A stretch of DNA of 64,000 bases from Dimorphilus gyrociliatus (Eukaryota > Animalia > Annelida), in assembly GCA_904063045.1 (NCBI GenBank), contig CAJFCJ010000003.1:1054001-1118000 (forward strand), in the 5' to 3' direction. Below the pieces are notes generated by a model, which had not been told where the DNA came from, ran no database searches, and was given only the letters and a program-made list of their open reading frames with translations. The position numbers and the translations under genes were made by a program. Below, one piece after another: positions 18,618 through 53,466 of this stretch; the first letter of the stretch is position 1; the number at the start of each line of letters is the position of its first letter.

Positions 18618-21600
18618 GAGAGAGGAGAGATCGGTAAAAAGGGAAGAAAGTTATATAATATCAATTTTTTGTTATAGGAATATATGTTTGTTTTATTTTA
18701 TTCTGTCAAGGTCGTTAATTGTCTAGCGCGTACAAATCGTGAATAATTTATTGCAAATACATATACACAAATTAACATTAGCCGATATATATTTTTCTTT
18801 CTAATAGGCTGTGGCGCCATTTCGCAACCGTTTTTGTACGGATTCTCGTTTGGAAATGGACGATCTAATTGATAACATGAAATCAGCAAGCAGTAATGAA
18901 GTATACGACGTAAGTTAAGCGTTTTAATCTATTTATTAATTATTTAATGGTAGAGGGAAAAAAATTTTCTCTGTAGAAGAGAAAAGCCATTGACAAATTA
19001 TTCCATTCATTTGTTACATTCGAAGTATTACAACTGTTATTTAACAAACTGACAAATATTTGTCTATTTTTTTGTTATTATCATCATCCTTACTGAATAT
19101 ATAATATGGATAATATGAGTCAGTTTGTACTTCCTTGTTTTCTACTTGTTTATTTACTCAAGGCTAAGTAGTAATTAAAAGAAAGTAAATTAATTTGTAC
19201 AAATGCAGTATGCGTACTTGAAAAGGAAAGTAAGAAATATTTCGTAAACAATTAATATATTTATTTATTTTAATAATAGAATAGAAACACCTTAGAAATA
19301 ACAAAAAAACAATATCTGCTCCATGTTAGTTACATATCTTCGTCTATAAATTACATTATTACCGTTACGTATAATAGTAACATTAACCGGAAGTTACTGT
19401 TGCCATACTTTCCCCAAGTTCCTCCCTTGCACATTCATTATATGTCATATATATTATAATATACATTTCGTTTTATTTCCTTCTTTCGTATTTCAGTATC
19501 TTTCACCTCGCTAATTAAAATTAAATATAAAATATAATAATAATGAAGTTTGAGAAGAGGAAGATATAGTCCCTTTTCCAAATATCTTAATAAAAATCTC
19601 TCTTACTCTTAGCTTTTACTCTTTCGTCTCTTTCTCTATTTATCTCTGTCTATCTATGTATATACTGTATATCTACTTTATATATATTATATATTTCTTA
19701 ACTTTACTCTGTTAACTCTTTACCCTCTTTTCTTCATATTTCATTTAATTTATAGTCTAGGCCATTAATAAAGTCAACAAGTAATTTTAATTGAGTAAAT
19801 CGTATCTCTAATGAATTCTACTTCATAGTCGATATAGATCAATCAATTTATATTAAATGAAAAACAATTCTCTTACCAATATTTTCCCATAATAAACAAA
19901 CAATTATGATCAATAATTATAGAGAATGTTAAAAATCATGAATATTTATAAGAAATACTAGAACCAAAAACAGATAGTTTTGTTTTTGTTTTTATCTATC
20001 AGGCAGAAAATAGTTCCTTTAGATTATATTAATTCTTACTATCTATCTCTATACTTTTCTATATAAATCTCTCATATCTTATTTAATTATTTAATATCGA
20101 ACTAAAAAATTCACCTCTACCCACTGTCAGTCTTTATTGAGTCAATTAGAGTGACATCATGAAAAAACACCCGTTTATTTATTGTATACAAAATAGCTAA
20201 ATAGGAAATTGTAAAGCATTAGGGTTAGGTGAAAATAGAAAAGGATAGGGGGAGGAATACACGCTAAGTAGATATAAAAGTGAATAATAATTCATTTCTT
20301 TTTCATTCATATTTTTCTTCTCTTAGCATAACTAGTATAACTGTGTTGTTGTTTCTTCTTATTATTATTAATACTTTTAATAGACGAAGAAGTTGACGAT
20401 GCCATTGATTTTTATAAGAGAAAAAGCAAGGAACAATTATATATAGATATTTTATTTAAATATGCTTTTGTTTAATTCTCTTTTAAAAAGAAACATAAGA
20501 AAAAGAACAAATAAAAGAAAGAAAATTTTCTCTGTAAAGTTATTTATTCAACTTTTTTTTTTAGTTTTTTCAATTTTTCTTTCTTATTTACTTTACTAAT
20601 TTATTTTTTTTTTCTCTTTCTTCCAAACAGAATAATATTATAAACTTCCAAACGGGTCAGCATCAATGGTATCCAACGTCTCATGCTAGGCCTACTTACT
20701 GTAACGTCTGTAGAGAAGCGTTATCAGGCGTCACTTCTCATGGTTTATCATGCGAAAGTAAGTTGTTTTAGTATATTTTTCTACGTAGAAAATTAAAGAA
20801 ACTCTTTATCACAACCTTTAAAAAGTTGTTTGATAATATTTTAGTTGTTAGCAAGGTTCTTTCCGTGTCTTTTTTTTAATCACTTTTTCAGTTGAACGAA
20901 AGAGGAAAATTGTTAAATGTCTTTAAAAGGCTATTAGTAAGAAAAGTAATAGTAGCGATATTAGGATATAAATTTACTGAAAAAATTAAGATAACTATTA
21001 TTATTTTCATTTTTATATTCATAAAAAATTCATTGAATGACCAAAGGAAAAGCGGAAATAAAAACCATTCAAAAATCATTCAATATACTTTTTATAAAAA
21101 TTTAATAAAGCAATTTATGTAGCGAGAAAAATTATTATTCTGTTTTATTGATAATTGTTTACTACATAATATATATATATATATATATGTACAGTATATG
21201 TTTATTCGAATGATTACATAACTATGAGTAGAGTACGTGTTTTGTTAAAATAATAGCAGAGAGGTAGGAAAGAATGTATAAATTTTACATAAATATAAAC
21301 TTGAATGGCAGTTCAAAAAAACTTTAATTTATTATTATTTTGTTAATATAAACATAAATAAATAATTTATTTCTAATTGTTTTATAAAACTTTCTTTCTT
21401 AAAATTATGTTTTTTTCTGAAAAATGTCACTATCTACATTCTATTTTTCTTTAATTCTTTTTTAATTTTGATCTAAAAAAAGACACAAAAAATGGTAAAG
21501 GAAGAATTTTTTTTACCATGCGTGACAGTTTAATGATATGTACTTTTATTTTTTTCCGGCTTTTCACTTTTTCTCTCTCTCTCTCTCTCTCTGTCTATCT

Positions 21601-23072
21601 GATACAGCCTATATATACAGTATGTACAAGGGATGAGGAGTCCGTTTACAAATAAAATTAACAAAATGACTGAAAAGTATCTTTTACTTATTCTCTCATT
21701 GATTCCAATCGTCCATCCCCACCACATACATACAAATAAAGGAAACACCAGCCCACCCACCTATCTCCCTTCCTACCTTGTCCTTCAAAGAATAATAATT
21801 TATTAAAGTGTAAAAATACATGATATATGCCTTTATGTTTGTTTTTTTTTTCAATGGCAAATTTATTATTCGACCATGAAACAGTAAAATGATAGAGAAA
21901 ATTGAACGAATACATATATATGTATATATATATATATAGTATATATATGTATATTGACTAATATATATATTTTTTATGACTATTTCATGATAATAAAAAA
22001 TTATTTTTGTATATTTAGAAAAAAAAAGTAAATTACTTCTGTGGAAAACTGGAAAACACTCTTTTTTTTTCATATCTTATTTATATTATTTTCTTTTCTT
22101 TATGTTTTTTTTTTGGGATATTATTTCATATTTTAGATCATTTTGATGAAGAGCTAAGTTAGCATGCTATCCGATTAAAAACAAGAAATATCAATAGTCT
22201 TATAAAAAAAATAATATGTTAAACCAAGTAAGAATGAAGTAAAGGAGGCTTGCGTATATGTACATAAACATTGTCTATACGTATATGTTTATATGTGTAA
22301 GCAAGTAAGTAAAGTAAGTAAATCTTTGTATAATTTATCTAAACTAATATTTTTATTCATAAATGTAAGCTGAATAAAAGGAAGAGAGAGAAAGAGAGAG
22401 AAAGGGATAAAGTTAAATATCCATGTGCAGAGACGACTTAGTTACATATAATTCATATATATAACAATCTTACTCGATATTAAATGTTTTTCTCATAATA
22501 ATTAATTAACTACCTATATTTAAAAAATATTATTAATTATTTTTTAATAGGTCATTTCATTATTATAATACATTGTTCATATTTATTTACATATATATAT
22601 AATTATGCAGCTTAAGTTCTATACAAAGCTCTATAACATGCATCTAATACTCTACTAATTTCTCCTATTTCTGGTACAGTTTGCAAATTAAAAGTTCACA
22701 AAAGGTGCGCATCTAGGACGGAAGTGAATTGTAAGTGGACTACTTTAGCCTCGATTGGCTCTGAAATAATAGAAGACGAAGAAGGGGTAAATTTTTATAT
22801 AAATAGTTCAATTAATGGAAAATTAAATATATTTAATTTCATCATTTTAATTAAGTTATAAGAAATACTAAAATTAATAATTAAATAATGTAATGTATAT
22901 ACTCATCAATATAGTCAACTAGATTCTAACAATATTACAAGTTCTATCTAATGAGCTATAGTTCAAAAATGTAAAAGTAAACATCTTCGTACTCATTATA
23001 TAATGTAGTACTTAACAAACTGTAACTTGTATTTAATGTACGGTATATCTATATATATCTATTTATATACAG

Positions 23073-23103
<31 letters not shown>

Positions 23104-24746
23104 CATATAAAAAGTAAGTAAATAGTAACAAAGGAGCTAATGTCAAAGGCCATTTTTCATTGCCTTGTAAAGAGTTGTGTAATTTTCCATATTGCTCCAA
23201 ATATTACTTGTAACACTTTCTTCTTATCTTATCGTTATTAATAACAAAATAGGAATAGAAGAAAAAAATGAATAATTAAAGTCTGTTATTTATTACAAAA
23301 GTAGAGTATACAAGTAGAAAAAGTATTTATTCAAAGTATATTTATATAGTATTGAAGATAGGTTGAATTCAATATAAATTGCTTAGAAATAGTGAGCAAG
23401 TTATTAAAACTAAAGCAGTAACAAACAAAGAAAAAACTGGTTATAAAAGAGGAAAAATATTTTTCTCCACCTTTAGAAAGTTGAAATGCCTCATCAATGG
23501 CTTGAAGGAAATTTACCAGTCAGCGCCAAGTGTCTAGTTTGTGACAAACCTTGTGGTAGCGTCTTAAGGCTACAGGATTGTAAATGTATCTGGTGTAAAG
23601 CTACTGTTCATACAAATTGTAAAGGAAAATTGGATAAAGTGTGCAGTATGGGACCTTGTAGTCGTCTTATTCTACCACCTACAAATATATCAGCCGTCGA
23701 TTTGGATGAGATGTGCAAAGCGAGAAGCTCACCGAGATTGGTAGAACCTCTTCTTGTATTCGTTAATTCGAAGAGTGGTGATAATCAGGGAGTCAAAATG
23801 TATAGGAAATTCAAGCGTATTTTGAATCCAGCTCAAGTTTTTGATTTGATCCGATCAGGACCACATTGCGGGTTTGTATTATTGTTCTTTTGTTTCTTTT
23901 TTCATCAATTGCATTATCCTTTTTTTTCCTCGTTCCTTGATTTCGTTAAGATAAAACGACAAACAATAACAACAATAACGGCTCTTCGGTAATGGAGCTT
24001 TCTAAAATACAATCTAAAAATACCCATACAACCAATTTCGTTTTATACTATTAGTATTATTCAGTTTACCAGAGCGTCACTCTACTGACGGTCCATAGTA
24101 TTCTTTATTTAGCTGACCATTTACCAAAAATAGAAATAATTTTTTTTGACGTCTATACTAAGCAATGTTTGTCACCAGCCAACAGTATTATTCAGCTATG
24201 ATTAGTTGACTATAATCAGCCTATATATACACAATAAAATACAGCGAACGACTATTTACCTACATGTTAATTTCTACGGGTCACGGTCAAACTAATTTAT
24301 AACAACATTGCATTATGACTGTAGAAAAATTAATGAATTGACTTGAAAAACAATTTAATTAGCCAATCAACGATGAATTTTCATTAGTTATTGCAAAATA
24401 TAGATATTTGAAACATTTACACATTTAGAATCATGTTTAAATGTTATCTTTATAGAAAAGATAACTTTTTATTAGGCTATAAATTAAGTTAACTATATAG
24501 CAATACTATATATTTTAACTATATGTCTATAAATACAATGGTATTTATATATATTTGTATGTATGTAAATAGTTCTTTAGCAACACTCTTACTCCATCTC
24601 CTAACCTACTCGCAGTAAAAGATGACATTTTGACCCCTAAGGCATTTATTGCAAAGTATTAAGTTATGCATAGGAATATATAATATATTATATATATAAA
24701 TTTATATACTTTATATATACAGTATATAGGCATTATATATAATTTG

Positions 24747-24781
<35 letters not shown>

Positions 24782-27700
24782 AGAAAGTTATAAACTTGTG
24801 CCAAACTGGTAATTAAGGCTAAAAAAAGTCGCCTTTTTACAAACGTTATTTATAGATAATAGTTTTATTTGGCCTACAGCCATTTTTGTAAAAAACAAGA
24901 AAAAAAAGTTCTAAAAATAGTCGTCTTTTTTCCGTATATAGCCTATTCCTTTGGCCAAAATTATCCAATTCTATTCACATCTTCTCAGCTTTTTCCTCTA
25001 ATTAATCTATTATTTAGTGGTTATTTTTTTCCTGAATTTCATTGTCCAACTTTACAAATGAATAATAAGGCCTAAGTGACTGATTTAAGAGATGTATTCA
25101 TCAAGTATAGTGGATTATTCATTATTAATAATTAGGTAATGTCTTTTTCTTTACCTTTCAGCCTAAGACTCTTTCAAGATCTGCCTCATTTCCGAATTCT
25201 AGTCTGCGGAGGAGACGGTTCAATTGGCTGGGTTCTAAGAGAAATAGATAAAAAGGATTTGATAAACAAGTGTCAAGTCGGTGTTCTACCATTAGGCACT
25301 GGTAATGATTTGGCTAGGGTCCTAGGTTGGGGATCGGCTTTTGATGATGAAGCTCAACTAGCTGCCTTTTTAGAGAAATTAGATCACGCCCAAATAAAGA
25401 TGCTCGATCGATGGAGTATTCTAACGTACGAGGGTTTAATGCCTGATCCGAGAAAAGATTCCCTAACAGATGACGCAATAACTTTGTATGAAGATTCCGT
25501 CGCAGCTCATCTGACAAAAATTGTCCAATCAGATAATCATAAAACTGTAATAATGTCGGCCAAGGTCTTGTGCGCTACGGTCAAGGATTTTGTGGAAAGG
25601 ATAGCTGAAATTGAGGAAGAGGAAGAAGAGTCCTCTTCAAAGTGTGCTGCGCTTCAAGAGAAACTCGATTCTTTATTGAATACTCTTGAGGCGGAGAGTC
25701 GTGAGGTTAAGAGGGAAAAAGAGGACCTTATGGAGAAAGAGGAAGAAGTAAAGAGAAAAAAACTAATGAGTAGGGCGAATAGTCTAAAGAAAGCAGTTCG
25801 CGAACTTATCGAACATGCCGAAAAACGTGAGCTATATTTTCATTCTAAAATAATAGCGGATATCTTTGAAAATAACGGAATTAATTGCAAATTAAACATT
25901 TGCGCTTAGCTCTTCTTTTCTCCTAACCTTCTACTATCTCTCCCTCGCTACGCGCCCCTGCGCGTGTATGTATGAGACTGTGTGTGTGTGTGTGTGTGTG
26001 CATGTACGTATGCGAACGTGAGAGTATCTGTATAAAGCCCATCTATCTATCTCTCTCTCTCTTTATTCTCATTTCTTCCCACGCTCTTTTCTCCTTTCAA
26101 AATCTTATTTAGTGATGGCAAATTGGGTAGATAACTCATTAATACCTTATATTACTTTAAAAGGAAAGATTTTATACAGTAGCGCCATCTTTGAGTAACG
26201 TAAACTAAACCGACTTTGCAATAGAAAAACAAAAATAAGCAGTAAGAATAATTTAAATAATTTAGCAAATACTAAGAATCAAGTGCCTAGATGATATCCA
26301 GGCAATTTTCATCTTGTATATAAACAAATAATATCTAAATGAGACTATATTTCACATATAATGGGGATATAAATTCCAAATGAAATATTATTTTCGAAAA
26401 AGATAAAGAATGAAAAAAGAAATACTCAAATCAAAAACTAGGTCGTTGAGGCTATTTTCTTAGAAAAGGATAATAAAATTTCTAGCGCACGCACTCGGTA
26501 ATATCATGTTAATAAATATGCTATACTATACTACTTGTTAAAGAAATATTGAAGAAAAAATTTCCCTCTCTTATTTAATATAGGCCTAGATAAGCAAGAA
26601 GAAAAAGAAAAAGAAAAAAGGACAAATAATTATTCGTATATAGAATTTTAAAAGGGTTATTAAATTACAATTAATTTTTCTATAACATGATATATATGAA
26701 AGATTAGTTAATATACCGTATATTATATTTAAATTTGTTAAAAGGAGAATGAAGGATAGTAAAGTTTAAGTAAGAGAATGGGAATGGGAGACCATCTCTC
26801 CTATTTAAGGTTAGAGTATGTTTCTTTTACAAAAAAAAAAGAAAAAATAGAAACAACGGATTCTGTTTGAGATGAAAGTGAGAAGATTTAGAAGGGAAAG
26901 TGTCTATTCTCATTTCCTGGAAATGCCCAAGTGGAAATTATATAATTATAATTTTACTTATCCTTCACTTATACCCCTCTTCAGTCTACTCTTGCCACTT
27001 GTTATCAAAATTTTTTCTTCTTTTCCTATTCTTCCATCTCTTCACATCATCTTTTTATCCACTCTTTATGTTTTTTTTTTTTAATTATTAAATATTTATA
27101 GTAATCTTTAGGATAAAATAAGAAAAGAGAGAAAGAAAGGAAAAAGAAAGTAATTTTTTCCTTTCTTTCTTCCTTCCTTTTCCCCTATTTGCGCAAATGT
27201 TTTACAAATGTTTTTTGTTTGTAAGTTATTAGCTGAGATGTATGTTTTTCTATAATTAAAAAAGAAGTATTAGCTTTTAATATATACATATACTGTATAT
27301 ATATATATATATATCTATATTGCAGTTGTCGATGAGCAAAATGAAATAAATAATGAACCAATTTGTCGAAGTTCTGCTCCGTCACCACCTGCATTTCAAA
27401 TACTACCACCTTCTCCATCCCGTTCTACGATTGATTTTCAATCGAATAATCCCGAAAAATTGATCATGCCGGAAGGCAAACAATCGTTATCTGTACCGAT
27501 GAGCAAATGGCGTGTAGACTCTGATTCTTCATATACAGATAGTGACTACATGTCATCGGGAACTAGCAGCCCTTATAGATCTCCGTCTCATTCCGCTAGT
27601 GAGTCTTCCTATTTCTGTTTTATGGAATCATTTTTAGATAATGATCTTAAGAGTGTTATTACTTTTCGAAATGTATATGCCTGTCTTCTTTTTATAGCTT

Positions 27701-28620
27701 CTAGTCACTCTCCTTCTCCAATTCGCTCACCACTGAAATTTGTACCACCCTTTGGGCCACCGGATGCCGATCCGAGAAAACAAACGGGATCGCCTACTAA
27801 TTCAAATTTCCCCATACTCCCAGGTAGAGGAAATAGAATGAAATTTATAGATTAATTTTTCACTATACTTCTTAGGAAACCCACTATAATATCAATATAT
27901 ATATGCTACCGTTTATATACTGTATATATACTGTATATTGTATATTAAATTTCTTTTATTATATTTAATAGCAAACTACGCACAAAGACAAGCAGAGTCG
28001 TTAAATATTCCAGGGAAGGGGCTAGTTAGTAAAGTTCTTCTACAAAGTATAGCACCAGTCGTGACTAGTGCGTTCCTGTCAAGAGTTGAACACGATGTGG
28101 ACTTGTAAGTATCCTAAAAACGAAACTAAACAACTATTACGAAAAATATTTCAGAGAGAGTTTTTCTGCAAAAAACAAATCAATTAATCATTTTTATTAA
28201 AATAACAATAGAAAACTATTAAAAACAAACCATTTCTTTAACACTATAACTACCACATTGATAAACTGAAATTATGAACCAGGGACGAACGTTGTATTAT
28301 GAATAATTACTTTGGTATAGGAATAGACGCGAAAATCGCGCTTGATTTTCATACTAAAAGAGAGGAACATCCCGAAAAGTGCAGGTAATTAATGGGCAAT
28401 TATTATATTTGGATATTTTCTTTGTCGTTCAGATCGTTGTACAACGAAAAAAGCGTCATGAATAATTATTTCGGAATTGGTATCGACGCCAAGATCGCAT
28501 TAGATTTTCACAACAAACGCGAAACGCATCCGGAAAAGTGCAGGTTTATATTTGAAGATTTTGAATGAACGCCTTCGCTTTCCTTCCTCCTACTACACTC
28601 TGTTGTATTAATATTTTTAT

Positions 28621-28651
<31 letters not shown>

Positions 28652-29111
28652 GTATATACTGTATATATATATAAATATGCTTAGTTAATTTTTTTCCTTA
28701 CTAACTTGATTAACAAAGAAAAAAGAAAGCAACATTCTAGCTTATATACATTATATTAGTTATTAAAGAAACGCTACCTGACAGCTTTAGTTGTGTTTAA
28801 TTTTTAGCGACATTTTAGCTGTATGAGAATGAGCAAAAAGCCGTCACTTTTCAAATTTTTACCTCATCAGTTTCGTTATTTATTTACTCCAATATATGTG
28901 TGTTTTTCATTTTTTTTTGGTACACAAGTTATTACTATCATCATATCTTTTCTTAATAATTAATTAATTAATTATTTACTTGATAGTACTCTTTTTGATT
29001 TACATATTTCCTTTACAGCTTTATATATGTATATATATATATATAGATATATATATATATATACTGTATATGTGTGCATATAAATTCATACATATATAGT
29101 CTATATATATA

Positions 29112-29151
<40 letters not shown>

Positions 29152-31699
29152 TTGTTGTTGTTGTTGATTCGGTTTGATAGATTTGACTAATTGGTGTTTG
29201 TTAGTTTTTATTTATTTTGATTATATATTAAACTTAATATTTAGATTAAATACCTATTCTTTAATACTTTAATAGAAGCCGAACAAAAAATATGATGTGG
29301 TATGGAGTCTTAGGAGGAAAGGAAATTATGCATAATACCTATCGCAATTTGGACCAAAGAATTCAGTTAGAATGTGATGGACAAAGGATTCCTTTACCTA
29401 GTTTACAAGGAATTGTAGTTCTTAATATATCAAGGTAGATTTTCTTTTAACCTTGATATGCCTAGTATATCAAATACATTTGATTTATAGTTATATGGGA
29501 GGAGCCAACTTTTGGGGTACGAAAGGCGATGTACGTTTAAAAACACACATATTTAATTTATAAACTAATTTATATAAAGATTTCTAAAAATAAACATAGA
29601 ATTTCCGGCCGCCTTCTTTTGATGATAAGATTTTAGAAGTTGTCGCCATATTTGGTAGCGTTCATTTGGGCGTTTCTAAATTTGTTAACCTACAACATCA
29701 TAGAATAGCTCAATGCAGGAGTTTAAAAATAACTATACTGGGTGATGAAGCTGTACCTGTTCAAGTTGATGGTGAAGCATGGCTTCAAAATCCTGGTTTT
29801 ATAAGAATTAAGCACAAGAATAGAGCTCAAATGTTAAGTCACGATAAAATATTCGCCGAAGCTCTTAGATCTTGGATGAAAAACGAACGAAGATCCAGCG
29901 AACAAACAGATTCAATCTTAACCGATCAAGAAGTATACGTTCTTAATGATTTCGTTTCCGTAACTGAGAGATTTACAGAATGGTATAAATTCCGTTTAAA
30001 ATACTAAATAACTCAATATTTCAATATTTTTACAATAGTTTGAAAATGTTATCGTCATTTACAACGTTTATAATGGAAGATTTAACGCCGTTGATTGTTC
30101 AAACACAAGGTTTCTTAAGGAAGTTATATTGTGAAAATGGTGAAAAAATGATTGAGGTAGGCCTAACAATGAAGATTTTATTTTATTTATCATTTTTATT
30201 AGTATTATATGTACCTAATGTTTTATTTGTACTTCTTCTTCTTCTTCCTCTTCTTCTTCTTCCTCTTCTTCTTCTTCTTCATTATTTTTTAAACAATTAC
30301 TTATTCTTTCTATCCATTTCTATATTTTCATTATTTACTTGTATAATTTCAGTACGGTACTTCTCAGGTAAATCTTATGTGTAAAACAACAAAGTAAAAA
30401 CAGTATACTGTTTACTCTTTACAGTATAGACGATATTTGCTGTTGTATTTTACTCACCTTTTCTTTTTATTCCCATTCGTCTTTCCCTTTATTTTTATTT
30501 TAAAAATTGTTGTTCTTTATCATTTATTATCATTGTTTTCTATACTTTCTTTTATATCTGCCCGTTAAGTTTTGCATTTGCATTTCTTTCCGATTTGTAT
30601 ATAGCATATATACAGTATATATATATAAATTTATATATAACTGTATACTGAATAATCTAATTTATTATATTAGTTCAGTTAAATTATAATATTAATAAAA
30701 TACTCGAGTTATTTATTTCTTTAACGAATCATGATTAAATCAAACAGCCGGCAATTAGGAGTCAGGTTTCTGATCTTGTTAGCAGTGTTACCCATCTCTT
30801 CCATAAATCAGTTCAATTACTAAACGAGAATAGCCGTGAATTAGTAAGTAATCATTACATATATTACTAATAATCTACGTTCCATATTTGTAATTAATAA
30901 CGTCTATTTAATTGATTGATACTCTATTTTTAGCAACTCTCATCCCAAGCTGATCAACAATTGCATCAAGCTTTACAGGAGATGGATGCAGAGATGGGTA
31001 GGGTTCATCAAATAGGAGGCCTACCCCATCCATATATATTAGACGATGTTCGTATAAAATTCGCATTAAACTGATTAATAATAATAATAAATAATGTCTT
31101 TTTCGTTATTCCCCAACTGATAAACAGCATGAACATCCAAAGAAACAGAAAAAGTTCAAGTTTGGCCCCTGGTTTAAACAGAGAAAGAGGGAAAAATCTG
31201 ATACACCTAAAGCACCAGATGGTAAATAGGTTACTTTCTAAATGAATTTTGAAACATTATGCCTTAACTTTATTATTTTCAGTGTCTAATGTTGAAAATT
31301 GGACTATCGATGAAGTTGTTCAATGGCTAAGCAGTTTCGGTTTTGTTGAATATGCCGAAAAATTTATTTCACATGAGATTACTGGTAAAGAATTAGTACA
31401 TTTGGAAAGATATGATCTAAAAGTAAGCATTTATTTTCATACCCTAGCCAATTATCAACCGATAGATGGAGCTAACAATTTAACTATTTATTTTGATTGT
31501 TAAAATACGCCATCTATATTACTTTTTATGTATTATTTATTTTCTTTTTCCATTATTTTTTTAGGATCTAGGAGTCTCAAAAGTGGGCCATTTAAAACGT
31601 ATGCAAAACGAAATAAAACACATGAGACATCAAGTTCAGGAAAGAGATAAATTGCAGAAAAACAAAACTCAAATGCTCGACATAGCTATTTCTTTTTAA
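13320..31699 (+). CDS. DGKH: Type II diacylglycerol kinase (delta/eta-like): PH remnant, C1a, C1b, split catalytic domain, SAM; ~1109 aa
   Basis: Exons: 13320-13340 (alternative first), 18808-18909, 20631-20757, 22680-22786, 23477-23871, 25162-25826, 27326-27598, 27698-27823, 27972-28104, [28283-28384 or 28433-28543], 29276-29434, 29491-29530, 29600-29982, 30039-30156, 30748-30843, 30934-31047, 31128-31221, 31283-31422, 31565-31699. All introns are GT-AG and phases are consistent (3330 nt with exon A). Motifs: [119 protein letters not shown]. Cannot be assigned to DGKD versus DGKH. Confidence 0.95.
13856..13876 (+). CDS. Candidate alternative first coding exon 1b of DGK (MNCFTKT)
   Basis: ATG AAC TGC TTT ACG AAA ACG|gtaaat: 21 nt, phase 0, same as exon 1a (ATG AAT TGC TGT TCA AAT AAG|gtgaat). 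Both are preceded by a shared actgcaaaagg word (13281 and 13798). Confidence 0.65.
14221..14238 (+). CDS. Candidate alternative first coding exon 1c of DGK (MNYFMS)
   Basis: ATG AAC TAC TTT ATG AGT|gtaaag, phase 0. tagtatgaactacttta matches 1b tagtatgaactgcttta at 16/17 nt. Confidence 0.45.
17418..17468. repeat. (CT)n(CA)n compound microsatellite
   Basis: Read directly from the sequence; intronic in DGK. Confidence 0.9.
18561..18612. repeat. Interrupted (GA)n microsatellite
   Basis: Read directly from the sequence. Confidence 0.85.
25979..26001. repeat. (TG)n microsatellite
   Basis: Read directly from the sequence; DGK intron. Confidence 0.85.
28283..28384 (+). CDS. DGK duplicated exon A (102 nt; (L)[33 protein letters not shown](R))
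   Basis: aaccag| ... |gtaatt, phase 2/2, open frame, canonical start of the DGK accessory catalytic half. Confidence 0.9.
28433..28543 (+). CDS. DGK duplicated exon B (111 nt; (L)[36 protein letters not shown](R))
   Basis: tttgtcgttcag| ... |gtttat, phase 2/2, open frame, paralogous to exon A. Confidence 0.9.
30232..30280. repeat. Imperfect (CTT)n trinucleotide repeat
   Basis: Read directly from the sequence; in a DGK intron, and the source of the poly-Leu in spurious ORF 30040-30384. Confidence 0.85.
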
Positions 31700-40937: not shown

Positions 40938-42832
40938 GTAAATAATCATTTTAATAGTTGTTAGAAATCTATGTAACTTGTAAAAATAGTAAGGTTTAAT
41001 AGGAAAATAAAGTCAATTTAATAGTTTTCTTTTATCTTTTCCCTCCTTCTTTTCCCAGTAAGAAAACTTTTTCGTTTGTTTGTTTACTTAAGAAATGTTT
41101 TTATTCTATCTTTTTTGAAACTTTTTCACCTTTCCCCTTCTTCTTCTTCTTCTTCATTGTCTTCTTTATAAATTTTACATTATCAGTATATATACTGTAT
41201 ATCAACTTAGTACAAACGAAAACAGGAATAAACATACTAATCCAGGCAGAGAGCTATAAATTACTAACATCTCTTTAATGGTAAACATATTTTTAAAATT
41301 TCAACGGGTTTTCAATTAAGGCCTAGGAAAAAGAGTAGAAAGATCTTTTCTTCTTATCCCTATCGCTCATTCTAAAAGTGAAGACTTATTGAAGAAATAT
41401 TAATAAATTTTTGAGGGAAAGGAATAAAGGATATACCCTCTTATGTAGACCTACTCGTGGAAAGTTTCTATACGTTTAAATAATATACCGCTTTGATCTC
41501 AATAAAACCTCGGTTTAAACCTAAGTTTATGGGTTTCTATAACATTTTAGCTATGTATATCCTATAATTAGACGGCGAACATAGGAAATTCAACATGTGG
41601 AAAAATTTAAATAAAGAGAAGAATAGAGTTTAAAAAGCTTGTTGCACGCCATATACAAAGTACCATCCAAATTCATAAAAGGAAGTCAAGAATACTCGAT
41701 TTTAAAAAGTTCTCTTTGAAAACACCTTTTACCTTATCATCTAATTAGAATATAGTCAAAGAAAGAAAGAAGGAATCCAAAGAAAGAGTGAAAGATAGAA
41801 GTAAAGATAGTTATAGTCTGGCATTTTGAATTTAAAGTGAGAAGGAATTTAAAAAAATATTCCAATGTCTATCTCTGTTTTCATTCGACGCTAAGTAATG
41901 GATAAACTAATCTTTAAAGGCACATTAGCCAATTCTTTCTTCTTTAAGGATAAGGGAAGTTAAGCAAGGGAGTTTTATGTTCAATTTTTATTGAAAAACG
42001 ATATATTTACACTATTTTGCAGATATATCATACAACTCTCGATCTTTTCCCTACTCTGTATATTTATAATAGTCTTATGAGTCTTGATCTCTATTTGATA
42101 TAGGAAAAAGGCGAGTATGGGGAAGCAAGTTGTTTATTCCGTTTTCCTGGTACTCTTTAGCCATTTATGACTTTAGAATCACTCTTCGTGATGTCTCTTT
42201 CCCTTGCTCTCTCTCTCTCTCCCTTTCCTAAATAAGCTAAGGTGGGGGGAATAAACACTTGTCTTATTCAATAGTTTATTTAACTGTCCCTTTTTTCTTC
42301 TTCTCCAATAACCTTGTTTAACAGGATAGAATGTAAATAGAGTAATAAAGAAAAGAAAAAGCTCTGTTTATATATGCGTTTATTATTTTCTTTTTTTGTA
42401 TAGGTAGATAATCGTCGCTATTAATTAACTATAATAACCAACAGTAAACGCTCTAGGGTTATTTTAAAGTTGCTGATTATTACGTGATCGGGCTAGGAAG
42501 CGTCGACTATTAACAATTTAATCAGCGGGGCGTAAATTATCTTTTCGAAAGGAATTTTTAACACCCCTCCCGTCCGTTTTCTTACTCTATTAAAGGTATA
42601 TATATATAAAAATAGGCTTATGTATATTTATTATACTAATTTTACCAAGGATATATATATATCATTAAAAATAATTCTATAAATATATGTTGATAGAATG
42701 CTGAGTCAAGTTCTCTTCTCCTCTCCATTAAATCGAGTACAGTTTCCTTTTCATCTTTTCAGATTACGTGACAAGCTAACGAGTGGAAAAAAACTTGAAA
42801 AGAAAGAAGGAGGAAGAAATCAAGAAACCTGC

Positions 42833-45800
42833 ATGTTCCAAATCATTCTTCTCATCTATATTTCCGGCGTTTCGGCGTTAGAAAAACTATATACAATTCC
42901 AGAAAATAGCCAACCAATTAAACTAGTGAATTTAAATGAACTGATTGAACCTTTTAGAAGATTTTCAGAAGATGAATTAAAAAGTGTAAAATTTTCCATT
43001 CTAAATAGTAAGGATGGGGCAAGATATAAAAATATGTTTGAGGTCAAAGGTCGAGAGTTATGGTCCAGTGATATAGATAGAGAATCAATAGAGGACTGCG
43101 TAAATCAAGAGTTTTGTTATCTGAAGTTTGATTTAAAGGGCAGCGATGGTAAAACAGCTGATATCGCTTCGATACGGATACAAATTTTGGACGAAAACGA
43201 TAATATTCCAAAATTTAACGGCTTTCGATCTGAAAATTATGACCTTAGCATATCAGAAGGACAACCAGTCTCTGAAGCGTTAAACTTACCCTATTATGCA
43301 GTTGATAAGGATAGCCCCGAAAACGGTATTGATTATTATACCCTTAGCGGTTCTGATAAATTCGAATTGGTAAATGGAAAATTACAACTCTTATCTAAAT
43401 TGGATAGGGAAAGAGAGGCAATCCATCATATTGTTGTTAAGGCTATCGATAAGGGCACACCGTCCCTAACTGGAACTCTTTTAATCAGGGTATTAGTAAC
43501 GGATTACAACGACAACGCCCCGAAATTTGAGAAGGAAACTTACGAGGTGAGCGTCTACGAGGATGAAGTACCCGGTAGCGTAATACAGCTCATTAAAGCT
43601 ACCGACAAAGACGAGGGGAAAAATGCAATAGTCAGTTACTCCATAGATCTTTCGCAATCTGACGAAGAAGTTGATGAAACGTTTCGAATTAATAATAAGA
43701 CAGGAGAACTAATCCTTACAAGTCTGTTGGATTACGATGAGAGTAAGAGGAACTACAGGATAATGGTTACCGCCCAGGATAATGGAGCTGATTCACTCAA
43801 GAGTCAGGCTCTTGTCAACGTTAAAATATTAAACGTCAATGATAATAAACATAAAATCTCTGTCATAAAAGAATTCAGAATCGTTGAGGAACAAGATGAA
43901 GATACAGAAGCGGGAGAAATCTATGTTCACGATAAGGATATAAACGATGGAAGTTTTAATTGCCTCATAAATGATACAATCAACTTCCACCTTGTACCAT
44001 ATAGCATATCCGGCTACTATCGTCTACTTTCTGCTAAAGTCTTTGATAGAGAAGAAAAATCGGAATTTCCGATTAATCTAACATGTTTCGATTCAGAGAA
44101 TTTACCCGAATCTTTAATTACTATAGTTAAAGTACTCGATTTCAACGATCACGCACCAAAATTTAATCAGACTTTCTACGAATTTACTATAAAAGAGAAT
44201 GATCCGAATCCTCTTGGCTTGTATTCTGTATTCGCTACAGATGCCGATGAAGGTTCCAATGCAATTATCTCTTATTCAGTATCCGGAACAGATCTAGTTT
44301 ATGTGCATTCAACTACTGGACAACTCTTTCTTAAAAGCTCATTGGATTTCGAACAAATTCAAACTCTTGAGTTTAAAATTGAAGCAAGGGATCACGGTTC
44401 TATTCCAATGGCTTCTCAAGTTCCGGTTTCTATACAGATAACGGACTTGAATGATGAAAGACCGGTGTTTGTCAAAGATGTCTTTGAGATGCATGTATTG
44501 GAAGAATCGTCCCCCACTGAGTATGTTGGCAAGGTTCTAGCAGTTGATAGAGATCAAAGAGAAGAGTTTAGGCGCCATACGTACGAACTCCTCGGATCAA
44601 CAGACCTATTTACAATCGATGAAGTTGGCAGAATTTATACAAAGAGAACGTTTGATAGAGAAATTCAAGACCTTTACGAATTCAAGGTTAAGGCCACTGG
44701 CGTAAAAGATCCTTCTTCTACTTCTACTGCTTTAGTTAGCATTAGTATAGAGGATATTAATGATCACAAGCCCATAATTGACTTTCCAAATCCCTCAAAC
44801 AGCACTATTACTGTTAAATCGAATTTAGGGAAAGATCGAATATTTGGCAGAATATTGGCAAGGGATAGCGATATTGGAGTGAATGGGGCATTAGTATATG
44901 AAATTATAGCCGGAAATGAGGACGATATGTTTTACGTTCATGGAACAACTGGTACTATAGCTGTCAACGATGACTTAAGAGGAATTAGGCAGTTGAAGTA
45001 CCTTCTTAAAGTTAGAGTAACCGATTCCGGCTCGGAACGAAAATTTGCTACATCCAACCTTACAATTATCGTTTTACGATCGATTGGCGACGGAAGTTCT
45101 GCTGGCGGTGACCCTTCTTTCAATCTCATGATAGTAGTTGCCCTCTCCTCCGTAACATTACTCATTGTAGTGGTTCTTTTGTTCGCCATCTTTCTAGTAA
45201 GAAGGAGACAACGACTCTTAGAAGAACAAGCTGCTAAAGATCGGAAGGAAAACGTCCTCGAACTGGAGAAAGTGGAAATTCACGCCAGAGTTGAAGATGG
45301 AAAGATAAAAGCTGATACTCAATTTCGGCCTCTTTCTTCTTTTTATCAAGTAAGTGAAATTTCCTCTATTTTTCAATTTAAACCTATGTTGCATTATTAA
45401 TTTTTATTATACGATTACGGAAAAGACAATAGTCATTAAAAATAGTCTCGTCTATTTCAAGTAAATAACAAAAAAAAAATGCCGAGTTGCTGTACTTAAT
45501 CACGTTCCTGTACTGTATAATTTGTAAATGGGAACAAACTTAGCAGTCTTCCCTTAGGCTATAAGGCAGTCTTCATTCATGCATGAAAGAAAACGCAAAC
45601 TTGACGGAATTACGCAATAGGCGGTTCCCTCATTAAAGCACCTGCGTTTCAACTTTCGCCGTGTTTGGCGGTGATGTAACGTAATCGAATCGAGTGGAAC
45701 GATGTTGTTTCGTATGACGTAACATGAGACGCGTAAATCGAAGGCAAATATATAGTTTAGTATTGTAAATAATTCAAATTTACCCACAATTCTGGTACAA

Positions 45801-51065: not shown

Positions 51066-53466
51066 AAAAAGAAGATGACTGCAATATTTAAATTATATGA
51101 TTAAATAAGATTGATGATACGTAATTGATTACGTAAAACATTACGGTGACGCGTTCATATAGTAATTAGACATTGTTTAGCATATAATAGTAAACTAGCA
51201 ATGGCGTTGAGTGACGCTCAATTTTTCATTAAGGCACAAAATAACGTCCAGCAATCTAGTGGAAATCCTTTAACAAATGGGCTTAGCGGTCACGCGCTGC
51301 TCTACTTTTATAAGTATGCGGGACGTTTCATTCTAGGAGATTCTATAACAGGAATTATAAAAATAGGGGGCGTGCAAACTTAACCGCGATCGTTGTAATT
51401 GTTTATAGTAAATTTCCCCCCGCGTCTGCCAACCTTTAAATTACAACTTCCTTCGTATACAAAGAAGAGAAATAGGGAGCCTGAAGGGATATGTATACTA
51501 CTGTTCACAATGGAAGTGAGGTGAAAACCTCAACATGTCTAACATGCGTTTTCTTTCACTTCAAATGAAAAATAATAGGCTTAGAAAAAAAACGCAGGTG
51601 TAAAACGGGGCTAATTATGATGTAACGTAAACAGTTTAAGTTTAAATTTGGTAGAGACTGCCAATCTTTTTTTATACTGTTCTCCTCCCATTTTAACCAC
51701 CCCTCTTTTTATTATTCTTCAGGTAGCCGATCATAATCCTCCTAGGCCTATTAGACCTCAAGCGGATTCCGAAGTAAAACGATTAATGGAATTGTTAAGG
51801 AGTGAAAGGGATTGTGAATCGTTATCAAATAGCGATAGCGGAAAAGGGTCTAGTGAACACGGTGATAACGGTAAGCATTTCTTGTAAACATATTATATAC
51901 TATGTAGCACTAATAGGTACCAAAAAGCACATGCATGCCTTTCGATATACTTTTCTATATACAGTATATTGGTACAAAGTATATATATCTATATATATAC
52001 AGTATATATCTATATCTATATATATATATATGTATGTATATATACTTCGCATACCTACTGTAACCTTTGTCTTGCCTCAGGTCAAAAACGTTCAAAGTTA
52101 CTTTTTTTCTATTTTTCGAAAGTTCTTCACAGCATGATTTAAGTCCTTTTTTCTCTTTTAATTTCTCCTTCTCTCTCTCTCTCGTTCTCTTTTAATTCCC
52201 TTTCCCAATCTTCTCTTTAATCAATAGGCCTCTCTACTAAAAGTAAATTGACTTTTAGGTATTGTTCATAAAATATTCAAAAGGTGTGGGGACATAAAAA
52301 TCAACCTGCAATTAAAAACTTATATTACTCTTTGAGAAAATGATAACATTAGAATTCTCTAAAGGATAGGCGACGATGGGAGGATATATTCTCTCTTTTT
52401 ACAAAAAAGTTACCGAATGCTTAAAATATCGATTAACTAGCTATTAAAGACTTTTTTATGGGTAATGAAAAATGTTGATCATTAGGTTTTGAAATTAGAA
52501 TTCCAACAATTCATTTCGTTTAACAATAAGATAAAGATCTTTATAACAGTAGTAGAAAGGAAGTTCAGGTATAACAAGAGGACAGGTTTAAGAGAAATAA
52601 TAAGCATAGGTAAATGACTTTAAAATGCGAACTTTTTACATCCTTAACAAGGTATAGAAAAAGAAATTTATTTCTAAGCACGCACAGATTTTTCTCTTCG
52701 TCATCATCGTCTTATTCTTTCGATATTCTTTTTCTCTAGCCACGCATACTCTCCGGTTGACTTTCCGTCGTTTATTTTTTTTTACCTTTTTCTTCTTGAA
52801 AGGTTCTCTCTTCTACGGAGAAAGATATACCTTATCCAATTAGAATTAATAAGACGAATAAGGTATAGGTCTGTTACAGATTGTGAGCACGTGTTAAAAC
52901 ATTGATCGTTTAATTACTCTTAATGAATACTGATTATTACTAACGAAAAAGGCGATAAAGTAAAACAGCTGAGCAAACGAATTTTAACAAATAAAGAATA
53001 AACTGTATTTAGTTCCCTTTTTACATAGATATACATTTATATAAAAGAACTTCCACCCCTTCAACCTTCATTCTCCACCCCCTCCCTTTCATTTTTTTTA
53101 TACATTGTTTAGCGATAATTTGCTGTGCTTTTATATCTCTCCCTTGTTATTTGCATATAATTTTTTATTATTGAATAGAATAGAGAAATATTTGATTCAT
53201 AACGGCGCCCCCTGTGTTGAGTTTGATGCCCAACAGAAATGCGCCGGTTATTATATAATTTTTCATTCATTCACTCAACCCCATGCACAGATCGACCTCC
53301 CACCAAGGGCCGAACGTTCAACGATTTAACAAAAGATAGATTCCTTTCGACAGCAACAGCTAAAATCAGGAGATCTTTCGATTCTGACGATGGCTCAACA
53401 ACTACTTCTGGTAGTTACGTAATGGACTGTAGTTTTAGAGAGTCATTCAGAGACTCTACTGTTTGA
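42833..53466 (+). CDS. PCDH: Protocadherin (7 EC repeats, TM, cytoplasmic tail); coding exons 42833-45349, 51723-51870, 53291-53466; ~946 aa
   Basis: Signal peptide MFQIILLIYISGVSA. Six linkers (DENDNIP, DYNDNAP, NVNDNKH, DFNDHAP, DLNDERP, DINDHKP) define 7 ECs. EC1 has C-x5-C and no Trp2. TM FNLMIVVALSSVTLLIVVVLLFAIFLV is followed by RRRQR. The tail contains SDSGKGSSE (delta-Pcdh CM1-like) and DGSTTTSGSY. Splice phases 0 and 1 are consistent. Confidence 0.95.
51031..51062. repeat. (CT)n microsatellite
   Basis: Read directly from the sequence; protocadherin intron. Confidence 0.9.

What the first reader, a model, noticed from the sequence alone, without database searches (positions are those of the whole stretch)
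28283..28543. Mutually exclusive duplicated exon in the DGK catalytic domain, spaced by a 48-nt intron
Seen: two paralogous phase-2/2 exons encode the [18 protein letters not shown] motif. Across these 18 codons there are 0 amino-acid changes but 11 synonymous differences, indicating long purifying selection on both copies. Differences lie in the flanks (DERCI vs SLYNEKSV; T vs N; E vs T). Both lengths are multiples of 3, so double inclusion would escape NMD; exclusion is probably steric, since the 48-nt spacer is shorter than every constitutive intron reconstructed here (56 nt or more). Read-through of the spacer hits TAA immediately. Exon A has a weak pyrimidine tract and B a strong one. Inference: a regulated switch between two catalytic variants of DGK. 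I am not aware of this being described for type II DGKs.
Basis: partly seen in the sequence, partly recalled or inferred. Interest (0 to 1): 0.85.

Follow-up and report, generated by a model that had tools for sequence, protein, structure and literature searches.

The report
Twin swappable exons in worm DGK
A lipid-signalling enzyme gene (type II diacylglycerol kinase) of a small AT-rich invertebrate carries two neighbouring copies of one small exon, and a distantly related species keeps both with no protein change. The gene therefore very probably makes two enzyme versions by using one copy at a time, but I could obtain no RNA data to show this.

Summary
Exon A (28283-28384, 102 nt) and exon B (28433-28543, 111 nt) are paralogous, have the same intron phases, and are separated by a 48-nt GT..AG spacer. 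Both encode positions 1-29 of the DAGK accessory domain.

New evidence comes from a related species found in public assemblies, whose synonymous sites in neighbouring exons are near saturation.
- It keeps both exons with 100% identical peptides (10 nucleotide changes, no amino-acid change).
- Its spacer is also exactly 48 nt, while four other introns changed length.
- The first 48 nt of intron after exon B are completely identical.

So both exons are translated and under selection, and neither is a relic. Owenia (another annelid), two unnamed animals and about 270 orthologous proteins have only one copy, so the duplication is lineage-restricted.

Mutually exclusive use is the best reading (about 0.7) but is not shown. 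The steric mechanism is plausible but unproven.

"Two catalytic variants" overstates the difference. The copies differ in a 3-residue flank, one variable helix position, and a Glu-to-Thr change at a residue invariant among type II DGKs.

This scan has noted many other exon pairs in this genome, but not this one.

The parts
27972..28104 (+). Upstream constitutive exon (133 nt), ending ..GGACTT|gtaagt. Its last two bases TT make Leu with the first base of either exon A (G) or exon B (A).
   Evidence: Conserved in the related species (97.7% amino-acid identity, pS 0.63).
28105..28282 (+). Intron upstream of exon A (178 nt; 207 nt in the related species). Its acceptor region is purine/A-rich and only the last ~25 nt are partly conserved.
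   Evidence: 60% global identity; 15/25 identical in the last 25 nt.
28283..28384 (+). Exon A, 102 nt, phase 2/2. It encodes [33 protein letters not shown], which is DAGK_acc profile positions 1-29. Donor is CAG|GTAATT.
   Evidence: The ortholog in L004:1532-1633 has 7 nt differences and no amino-acid change.
28385..28432 (+). 48-nt spacer intron with GT..AG ends. It consists of a 7-nt donor signal, about 15 freely varying nt, and 26 conserved nt (probable branch point plus pyrimidine tract of exon B). Reading through gives TAA at once.
   Evidence: It is exactly 48 nt in both species while four other introns changed length. 40/48 nt are identical, and 7 of the 8 changes lie in 28392-28406.
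28433..28543 (+). Exon B, 111 nt, phase 2/2. It encodes [36 protein letters not shown], which is DAGK_acc profile positions 1-29. It has a strong pyrimidine-rich acceptor and a weak donor, CAG|GTTTAT.
   Evidence: The ortholog in L004:1682-1792 has 3 nt differences, all silent. Synonymous sites are significantly more conserved than in constitutive exons (p=3.6e-4).
28544..28591 (+). Intronic block just after exon B that is 100% identical in the related species. It is pyrimidine-rich at its 3' end. Together with the end of exon B it can form a hairpin (28532-28583) that holds the donor of exon B. It is a candidate splicing-regulatory element.
   Evidence: uninterrupted identity 28500-28591; hairpin -14.7 kcal/mol, z -1.85, 22 of 500 shuffles as stable. 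No Rfam family.
28544..29275 (+). Intron downstream of exon B (732 nt; 585 nt in the related species). It contains (TA)n repeats.
29276..29434 (+). Downstream constitutive exon (159 nt). It begins with the A that completes Arg and continues [16 protein letters not shown].., which is DAGK_acc profile positions 31-83.
   Evidence: 100% amino-acid identity and pS 0.52 in the related species.

Best explanation
The two exons are a pair of homologous, mutually exclusive exons made by a tandem exon duplication in the lineage of this animal. Earlier notes name it as the miniature annelid Dimorphilus gyrociliatus; I did not test that. Each mRNA joins the exon ending at 28104 to either A or B, and then to the exon starting at 29276. 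This gives two type II diacylglycerol kinases that differ only at the start of the C-terminal (accessory) catalytic subdomain. The A form has a junction 3 residues shorter, Thr after DFH, and the Glu that is invariant within type II DGKs. The B form has the ancestral-length junction with its aromatic residue, Asn after DFH, and Thr in place of that Glu.

Shown: both exons exist, both have their own splice sites, both encode the same part of the domain, and both are under strong protein-level selection in two divergent species. Both also show extra constraint on silent sites and on adjoining intron sequence, as is usual for regulated alternative exons.

Inferred: exclusive use. The most likely way it is enforced is crowding. 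Only about 15 free bases separate the donor signal of A from the 26 conserved bases that serve as branch site and pyrimidine tract of B, and the 5' splice site to branch point distance is about 22-30 nt. U1 on A's donor and U2/U2AF on B's acceptor can therefore hardly sit together, and the 48-nt spacer is removed poorly or not at all. The choice between the exons is probably set by their complementary weak signals: A has a poor acceptor and a good donor, B has a good acceptor and a poor donor that may sit in a hairpin. The invariant 48-nt block after B probably also takes part.
For: Anatomy and reading frames.

Both exons match DAGK_acc positions 1-29 with equal score, and the next exon continues at position 31. 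The gene is a type II DGK with C1, split DAGK_cat/DAGK_acc and SAM domains.

Related-species contigs L004/L005 hold both exons.
- The peptides are 100% identical.
- There are 7 and 3 nucleotide changes, none altering the protein. Neighbouring exons have pS 0.49-0.63, against 0.34 for A and 0.155 for B.
- Fisher tests against constitutive exons give p=3.6e-4 for B and 1e-4 for A+B.
- The probability of so few changes under neutral drift is below 1e-8.

The spacer is 48 nt in both species, while the other introns are 178/207, 732/585, 56/76 and 69/60 nt. Identity is uninterrupted from 28500 to 28591, against 51-60% identity in other introns.

A versus B: silent sites are saturated and dN is 0.13, so the duplication is much older than the species split.

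No ortholog among about 270 proteins has the motif twice. In an AlphaFold model of an ortholog the exon unit is a well-packed strand-strand-helix at the start of the C-terminal lobe, with pLDDT about 90 and a SphK1/DgkB-like fold. A tandem double copy would therefore disturb a conserved fold.

The published criteria for predicting homologous mutually exclusive exons (neighbouring, similar, same frame, similar length; PMC5740500) are all met.
Against: There is no RNA evidence at all.

Both exon lengths are multiples of 3. Double inclusion and double skipping would therefore stay in frame and would not be removed by nonsense-mediated decay.

The 48-nt spacer has canonical ends and a good pyrimidine tract. 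It is longer than the roughly 40-nt minimal intron of C. elegans, where only spacers under 40 nt are called steric (PMC4165533). The minimal intron of this genome is not known to me.

In humans only about a fifth of similarity-predicted candidates were validated as mutually exclusive (PMC5740500).

The hairpin and the exon A/exon B pairing are not significant on their own, and covariation cannot be tested because the sequences are invariant.
Confidence: 0.7

Rival explanations
1. The exons are alternative but not strictly exclusive. The pair would behave as two cassette exons: A-only and B-only forms exist, but A+B or skipped forms are also made at appreciable levels, because nothing in the reading frame forbids them.
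For: Both lengths are multiples of 3, and all four combinations stay open. The spacer has canonical GT..AG ends and a good pyrimidine tract. 48 nt exceeds the ~40-nt minimum known in C. elegans. Many similarity-predicted pairs in humans turned out to be spliced in other ways.
Against: Double inclusion would repeat DAGK_acc positions 1-29 inside a packed strand-strand-helix unit. Skipping would delete the motif that is invariant in 65 orthologs. No ortholog shows either form. The spacer length is frozen at 48 nt while the other introns drift.
Confidence: 0.15
2. Both exons are constitutively included. The 48-nt spacer would be an ordinary very short intron, and the protein would carry a tandem repeat of the first 34-37 residues of the accessory domain.
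For: This would also explain purifying selection on both exons, the conserved splice signals in the spacer, and a spacer length held at a workable minimum. The species named by earlier notes is reported to splice short introns efficiently (PMC7854359).
Against: About 270 orthologs from cnidarians to vertebrates have one copy, including the annelid Owenia at the DNA level. Both copies score identically to the same profile positions, and the unit is part of the folded core. The reduced silent-site divergence and the invariant intron block next to exon B are the signature of regulated alternative exons, not of constitutive ones; neighbouring constitutive exons lack it.
Confidence: 0.12
3. Only one of the two exons is ever used, and the other is an unused relic of a duplication.
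For: None beyond the lack of RNA data. Exon A has a poor acceptor. Predicted extra exons are often pseudoexons in other genomes.
Against: Both copies show no amino-acid change against a species whose silent sites are near saturation. Both keep intact splice sites and reading frame, and there are no indels. The probability of this under neutral drift is below 1e-8 for either exon.
Confidence: 0.03

Closest known systems
Homologous mutually exclusive exon pairs that arose by tandem exon duplication, as catalogued in C. elegans (PMC4165533), Drosophila and human (PMC5740500)
   Same: The exons are neighbours of similar length and the same phase, with clear sequence similarity, and each has its own splice sites. 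They encode the same structural element, so one copy fits the fold. Silent-site and flanking-intron conservation is raised.
   Different: Exclusive use has not been observed here. The gene (a type II DGK) is not on any list I could find. The pair seems restricted to one annelid lineage: it is absent in Owenia and not annotated in molluscs, nemerteans, a brachiopod, arthropods or vertebrates.
Steric-interference mutually exclusive exons: mammalian alpha-tropomyosin exons 2/3 (from my own knowledge), and C. elegans egl-15 5A/5B (14-nt spacer), let-2 9/10 (30 nt), bet-2, gly-5 and gly-6 (PMC4165533)
   Same: The exon lengths are 3n, so decay of mis-spliced RNA cannot enforce exclusivity. The spacer is very short, so the donor of the first exon and the branch site of the second lie too close together.
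   Different: The C. elegans spacers are below that species' ~40-nt minimal intron. Here the spacer is 48 nt, and the minimum for this genome is not known to me, so the case is borderline. A second pair in the same window (p24, 36-nt spacer) fits the steric class better.
Known splice variants of mammalian type II DGKs: delta1/delta2 and eta1-eta4 (PMC5028035)
   Same: The enzyme class and domain plan are the same (C1 domains, split catalytic region, SAM domain), and alternative splicing is used to diversify one gene.
   Different: The mammalian variants change the N-terminus, the SAM-bearing C-terminus, or a 31-residue cassette between coiled coils, or they truncate the enzyme. None swaps a piece of the catalytic region between two homologous exons.

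Membership tests
Homologous mutually exclusive exon cluster | Directly neighbouring internal exons with significant sequence similarity | tested here: met
   72/102 nt are identical. 26 of the 28 aligned residues from Met to Cys are identical. Both exons hit DAGK_acc positions 1-29 at 47.3 bits.
Homologous mutually exclusive exon cluster | Same intron phases and similar length, so that either exon fits between the flanking exons | tested here: met
   102 and 111 nt, phase 2/2. Both single-exon joins give open DGK sequence.
Homologous mutually exclusive exon cluster | Each exon is functional (expressed and translated), not a pseudoexon | tested here: met
   This is indirect evidence, from selection. 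There are 0 amino-acid changes in either exon against a species with pS about 0.58 in neighbouring exons, and splice sites are intact in both species. No transcript was seen.
Homologous mutually exclusive exon cluster | Splice-junction reads from each exon to the flanking exons that bridge the other exon | not testable with these tools
No cDNA-derived protein or contig of this species was found.
Homologous mutually exclusive exon cluster | No junction reads joining the two exons to each other | not testable with these tools
   Same reason.
Steric-interference type of mutually exclusive splicing | Spacer intron, or its 5' splice site to branch point distance, below the minimum the organism's spliceosome can use | tested here: inconclusive
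   The spacer is 48 nt, with a likely branch point 22-30 nt from the donor. The shortest constitutive introns seen here are 56-78 nt (n about 5). The published median is 66 bp for the species named by earlier notes. The C. elegans minimum is about 40 nt. The genome-wide minimum is not available to me.
Docking site / selector RNA-structure type of mutually exclusive splicing | Conserved competing base pairings between one docking site and a selector next to each exon | tested here: not met
   Folding 28260-28615 and its ortholog gives z-scores of +0.26 and +0.07. One local hairpin over B's donor (z -1.85) and one 8+4 bp pairing between the 5' ends of A and B are not significant, and there is no covariation to test.
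Type II diacylglycerol kinase (delta/eta/kappa class) | Two C1 domains, a catalytic region split into DAGK_cat and DAGK_acc by a long linker, a C-terminal SAM domain, and best matches to delta/eta orthologs | tested here: met
   Pfam finds C1_1, DAGK_cat, DAGK_acc and SAM_1/2 on the exons. tblastn of Priapulus and Cherax delta/eta proteins is collinear from 18811 to 31422. The best database matches are named DGK delta/eta. The PH domain is only weakly matched and I did not examine it.

The most novel reading that the evidence does not exclude
A lineage-specific, regulated exon switch gives one type II DGK gene two enzyme forms. They would differ in a real property (activity, lipid preference, or coupling of the C-terminal lobe to the long regulatory linker), because exon B replaces a Glu that is invariant in all other type II DGKs sampled and exon A shortens the lobe junction by three residues. 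Exclusivity would be enforced by a spacer held at exactly 48 nt. This pair would be one of a class of ultra-short-spacer exon pairs (36-48 nt) through which a gene-poor, compacted genome regains isoform diversity.
Probability: 0.25. Interest if true: 0.55.

Novelty: new member of a known kind. Interest (0 to 1): 0.42.

Why it matters
If confirmed, this would be the first case known to me of a DGK whose catalytic region is varied by swapping homologous exons. It would point to two natural variants at a residue (the second Glu of KREEHPEKC) and a junction that nobody has probed in type II DGKs, enzymes linked in mammals to insulin signalling and mood disorders. Assaying the two forms would be a cheap structure-function experiment.

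The frozen 48-nt spacer, the invariant intron block and the complementary weak splice sites also make this a compact test bed for how exclusivity is enforced in an animal with very short introns. The wider impact is limited: the pair is confined to one small annelid lineage and the kind of mechanism is well known.

Tried and rejected
After that I sent nothing from 28639-28680 to any collection, pattern, paper or findings search. Local scripts did read the whole window file.

2. Transcript-derived proteins. A search with the exon-B open frame and with the linker exon found no cDNA-derived product of this species. The second did find the related species' genomic contigs.

3. Metagenome scans with the end of the upstream exon (nothing) and with a degenerate A/B core pattern (one chance hit in a 64% GC bacterial contig).

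4. Deeper conservation. There is a single copy in Owenia and in two unnamed animals, L007 and L008. The Lingula protein was not on record for a locus look-up. Isoform sets of crayfish, a bee, a whitefly, a mosquito, a tick and an oyster do not differ at this exon.

5. RNA-structure mechanism. No exceptional folding and no Rfam family.

6. Solved structures. No PDB chain matches the type II accessory domain by sequence.

7. An automatic scan for short introns in the window was too noisy to give a length distribution.

8. The spliced full-length protein has no reference, so I did not search with it. The public annotation of this gene therefore remains unchecked.

Full report
**1. What is in the sequence**

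The region reads as the first-stage reader said.
- Exon A is 28283-28384 (102 nt), with acceptor ..aaccag| and donor CAG|gtaatt.
- A 48-nt GT..AG spacer follows (28385-28432).
- Exon B is 28433-28543 (111 nt), with acceptor ..tttctttgtcgttcag| and donor CAG|gtttat.
- The upstream exon (27972-28104) ends with TT, so either exon completes a Leu codon.
- Both exons end with AG, which the A at 29276 completes to Arg.

In the 18 core codons ([18 protein letters not shown]) no amino acid differs, while 11 codons differ at the nucleotide level.

Outside the core, A has DERCI where B has SLYNEKSV, Thr where B has Asn, and Glu where B has Thr. A-only, B-only, A+B and skipped joins all stay in frame. 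Retaining the spacer gives TAA at once.

Each exon alone matches positions 1-29 of the 158-position Pfam profile DAGK_acc with the same score (47.3 bits). The next exon continues at profile position 31. The two exons therefore encode the same piece of one domain.

The gene is a type II DGK.
- C1, DAGK_cat, DAGK_acc and SAM domains lie on collinear exons from about 18800 to 31400 on the + strand.
- The best database matches are named DGK delta/eta.

**2. Are both copies functional?**

The protein collections held no product of this species for the region. A search with the linker exon did find a 119-residue open frame from a related organism. Its contigs L004 and L005 (Logan assemblies of two runs) span the whole 3' half of the gene and carry both exons, at L004:1532-1633 and 1682-1792.

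The two species are far apart. In five neighbouring constitutive exon segments the proportion of silent sites changed is 0.49-0.84, pooled 0.58, which gives dS of about 0.8-1.3. The short constitutive introns are only 51-60% identical and have different lengths.

Against that background:
- Exon A has 7 nucleotide differences and exon B has 3.
- None of them changes an amino acid.
- Under neutral drift the chance of so few changes is below 1e-8 for either exon.

An unused relic is therefore excluded for practical purposes, and both exons must be translated.

Silent sites are also more conserved than in constitutive exons. The proportion changed is 0.155 for B (Fisher p = 3.6e-4), 0.34 for A (p about 0.04-0.10), and A+B together give p = 1e-4.

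Identity runs without interruption from 28500 to 28591, which covers the last 44 nt of exon B and the first 48 nt of the following intron. This extra constraint on silent sites and on adjoining intron sequence is the usual mark of regulated alternative exons.

**3. The spacer**

The spacer is exactly 48 nt in both species. The four other introns I could compare changed length: 178/207, 732/585, 56/76 and 69/60 nt.

Seven of its eight substitutions fall in 28392-28406. The spacer therefore consists of three parts:
- a 7-nt donor signal for exon A;
- about 15 bases that are free to vary;
- 26 conserved bases that must hold the branch point and pyrimidine tract for exon B.

A branch point in that conserved part lies only 22-30 nt from the donor of A.

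**4. Age and spread of the duplication**

Between A and B the silent sites are saturated and dN is 0.13, in both species. The duplication is therefore much older than the split of the two species.

It is not widespread.
- The locus of the annelid Owenia fusiformis (L009) has one copy, and no intron after ..EKC.
- Two unnamed animals with large contigs (L007, L008) have one copy within 6 kb either side.
- Of about 270 orthologous proteins retrieved, none carries the motif twice. They include isoform sets from a crayfish, a bee, a whitefly, a mosquito, a tick and an oyster, and none of these sets differs at this exon.

Comparison with Owenia and L007 shows which copy looks ancestral. Exon B has the ancestral length and keeps the aromatic residue six positions before the Met. 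Exon A lacks three codons there, although it starts with the same GGACGA as the Owenia exon.

**5. What the swapped piece is**

An AlphaFold model of the Lingula ortholog's catalytic region, built on 65 orthologs, has mean pLDDT 67.5; the low values lie in the linker.
- The exon unit is modelled as strand-strand-helix at the very start of the C-terminal lobe, with pLDDT about 90.
- Foldseek places the model with sphingosine kinase 1, bacterial DgkB-type kinases and NAD kinases, as expected for this superfamily.
- No solved structure matches the type II accessory domain by sequence.

In the 65-sequence alignment the residues of E..M..Y.GIG.DA...L.F...R.E are invariant. A and B share all of these except the last Glu, which B replaces by Thr. 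That position is invariant only within type II DGKs: other DGK classes have Ala, Asn, Arg or Asp there.

The Thr/Asn position varies freely among orthologs. So the two forms keep the family-wide motif. They differ in the length of the lobe junction and in one class-specific helix residue. This is a plausible basis for a modest functional difference, but it does not change known catalytic residues. I could not measure distances to the active site because the model file is not exposed to scripts.

**6. Mutually exclusive or not?**

I obtained no RNA evidence. Only one RNA run held any of the sampled words (5%). Two metagenome scans found nothing relevant.

The case for exclusive use is therefore indirect.
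- Both exons encode the same profile positions of a packed structural unit.
- Every other animal sampled has one copy.
- The pair meets all the published prediction criteria (PMC5740500).
- It shows the conservation signature of regulated exons.
- The spacer is frozen in length.

Against this:
- All combinations stay in frame.
- The spacer has canonical signals.
- 48 nt is above the roughly 40-nt minimum of C. elegans, where only spacers under 40 nt are treated as steric (PMC4165533).
- In this window the short constitutive introns I could define are 56, 58, 68, 69 and about 78 nt.
- The genome paper for the species named by earlier notes gives a median of 66 bp and says short introns are spliced efficiently (PMC7854359).

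48 nt is thus at or below the lower edge, but I cannot say it is unspliceable. I put strict mutual exclusivity at about 0.7. Given that, I put the steric mechanism at a little under one half.

**7. Other mechanisms considered**

- Folding of the whole unit is unremarkable in both species, with z of +0.26 and +0.07.
- A hairpin at 28532-28583 would hold the weak GTTTAT donor of exon B (-14.7 kcal/mol, z -1.85).
- The 5' end of exon A can pair with a palindrome at the 5' end of exon B.
- Neither pairing is significant, and the sequences are invariant, so covariation cannot be used.
- No Rfam family matches.
- The splice signals are complementary: A has a poor acceptor and a good donor, B a good acceptor and a poor donor. 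This fits competition and regulation, but A-rich acceptors also occur at constitutive introns of this gene.

**8. Literature**

Full-text searches found no mutually exclusive exons in any DGK.
- The one paper linking the two terms describes an alternative 3' splice site in C. elegans dgk-1, a theta-type enzyme.
- The known mammalian type II variants (delta1/2, eta1-4) change the termini or a cassette between coiled coils, or truncate the enzyme (PMC5028035).

**9. Earlier notes of this scan**

Earlier notes name the genome as Dimorphilus gyrociliatus and list many other candidate exon pairs in it, some with RNA support and some with spacers of 36-37 nt. I treated these as leads.
- I did not test the species name. 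The AT-richness and short introns are consistent with it.
- I confirmed at the sequence level that the p24 gene in this window has an exon pair with a 36-nt spacer.
- This DGK pair had not been reported before.

**10. Verdict**

The feature is real and correctly described. Both copies are functional by strong evolutionary evidence. Mutually exclusive use is the best but unproven reading, the steric mechanism is plausible only, and the "two catalytic variants" wording should be softened. It is a new member of a well-known kind, restricted to one lineage, and of moderate interest.

Noticed in passing
window 62591-62860 (+): The p24/TMED gene in the same window has a second tandem pair of homologous exons (..[39 protein letters not shown] / ..[39 protein letters not shown]). 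They are separated by a GT..AG spacer of only 36 nt. It is a clearer candidate for steric exclusion than the DGK pair.
   Followed up: partly
window 28500-28591 (+): 92 nt are completely identical between two species whose silent sites are near saturation: the last 44 nt of exon B plus the first 48 nt of the intron. The intron part ends in a CU-rich run and can form a hairpin (28532-28583) that holds the weak donor of exon B. There is no Rfam match.
   Followed up: partly
window 28290-28302 and 28434-28446 (+): The 5' end of exon A (CGTTGTAT.ATGA) can pair with the 5' end of exon B, which contains the perfect palindrome CGTTGTACAACG. The same CGTTGTA word is read in different frames in the two exons. 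It is not statistically significant and is invariant in the relative.
   Followed up: partly
L009:28240-28330 (Owenia fusiformis DGK locus): Just upstream of the single homologous exon, about 60 nt are tandemly duplicated. The unit (ttcgattttagGGACGACTA[T/C]CAAGAAAAG) holds the acceptor and the first ~22 nt of the exon, so Owenia has two candidate acceptors in a row.
   Followed up: no
L009:28415-28440 versus window 28543/29276 and L007:6084: The intron after ..HPEKC|R is present in this genome, in its relative and in the unnamed animal L007, but absent in Owenia, where the exon runs on into RSRTRN. Many ORF-level hits from other animals also read straight through.
   Followed up: no
window 28544-28570 (+): If the donor of exon B is not used, the frame runs on for nine codons (RFIFEDFE) to a TGA. 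This would give a DGK without most of the accessory domain, analogous in outcome to the kinase-dead mammalian eta4 variant. The conservation extends past the stop, so it is not explained by coding.
   Followed up: no
window 42683-45397 (+): A 905-codon open frame encodes a run of cadherin repeats with a transmembrane segment: a protocadherin-like gene with one very large exon. A likely cytoplasmic exon lies near 51621-51884.
   Followed up: no
window 28639-28680: A (TA)n repeat tripped the read tool's filter and cost the only read-laying run. Similar TA / TATACTGTATATA repeats fill several introns of the gene (for example 27900-27950 and 29030-29150).
   Followed up: no
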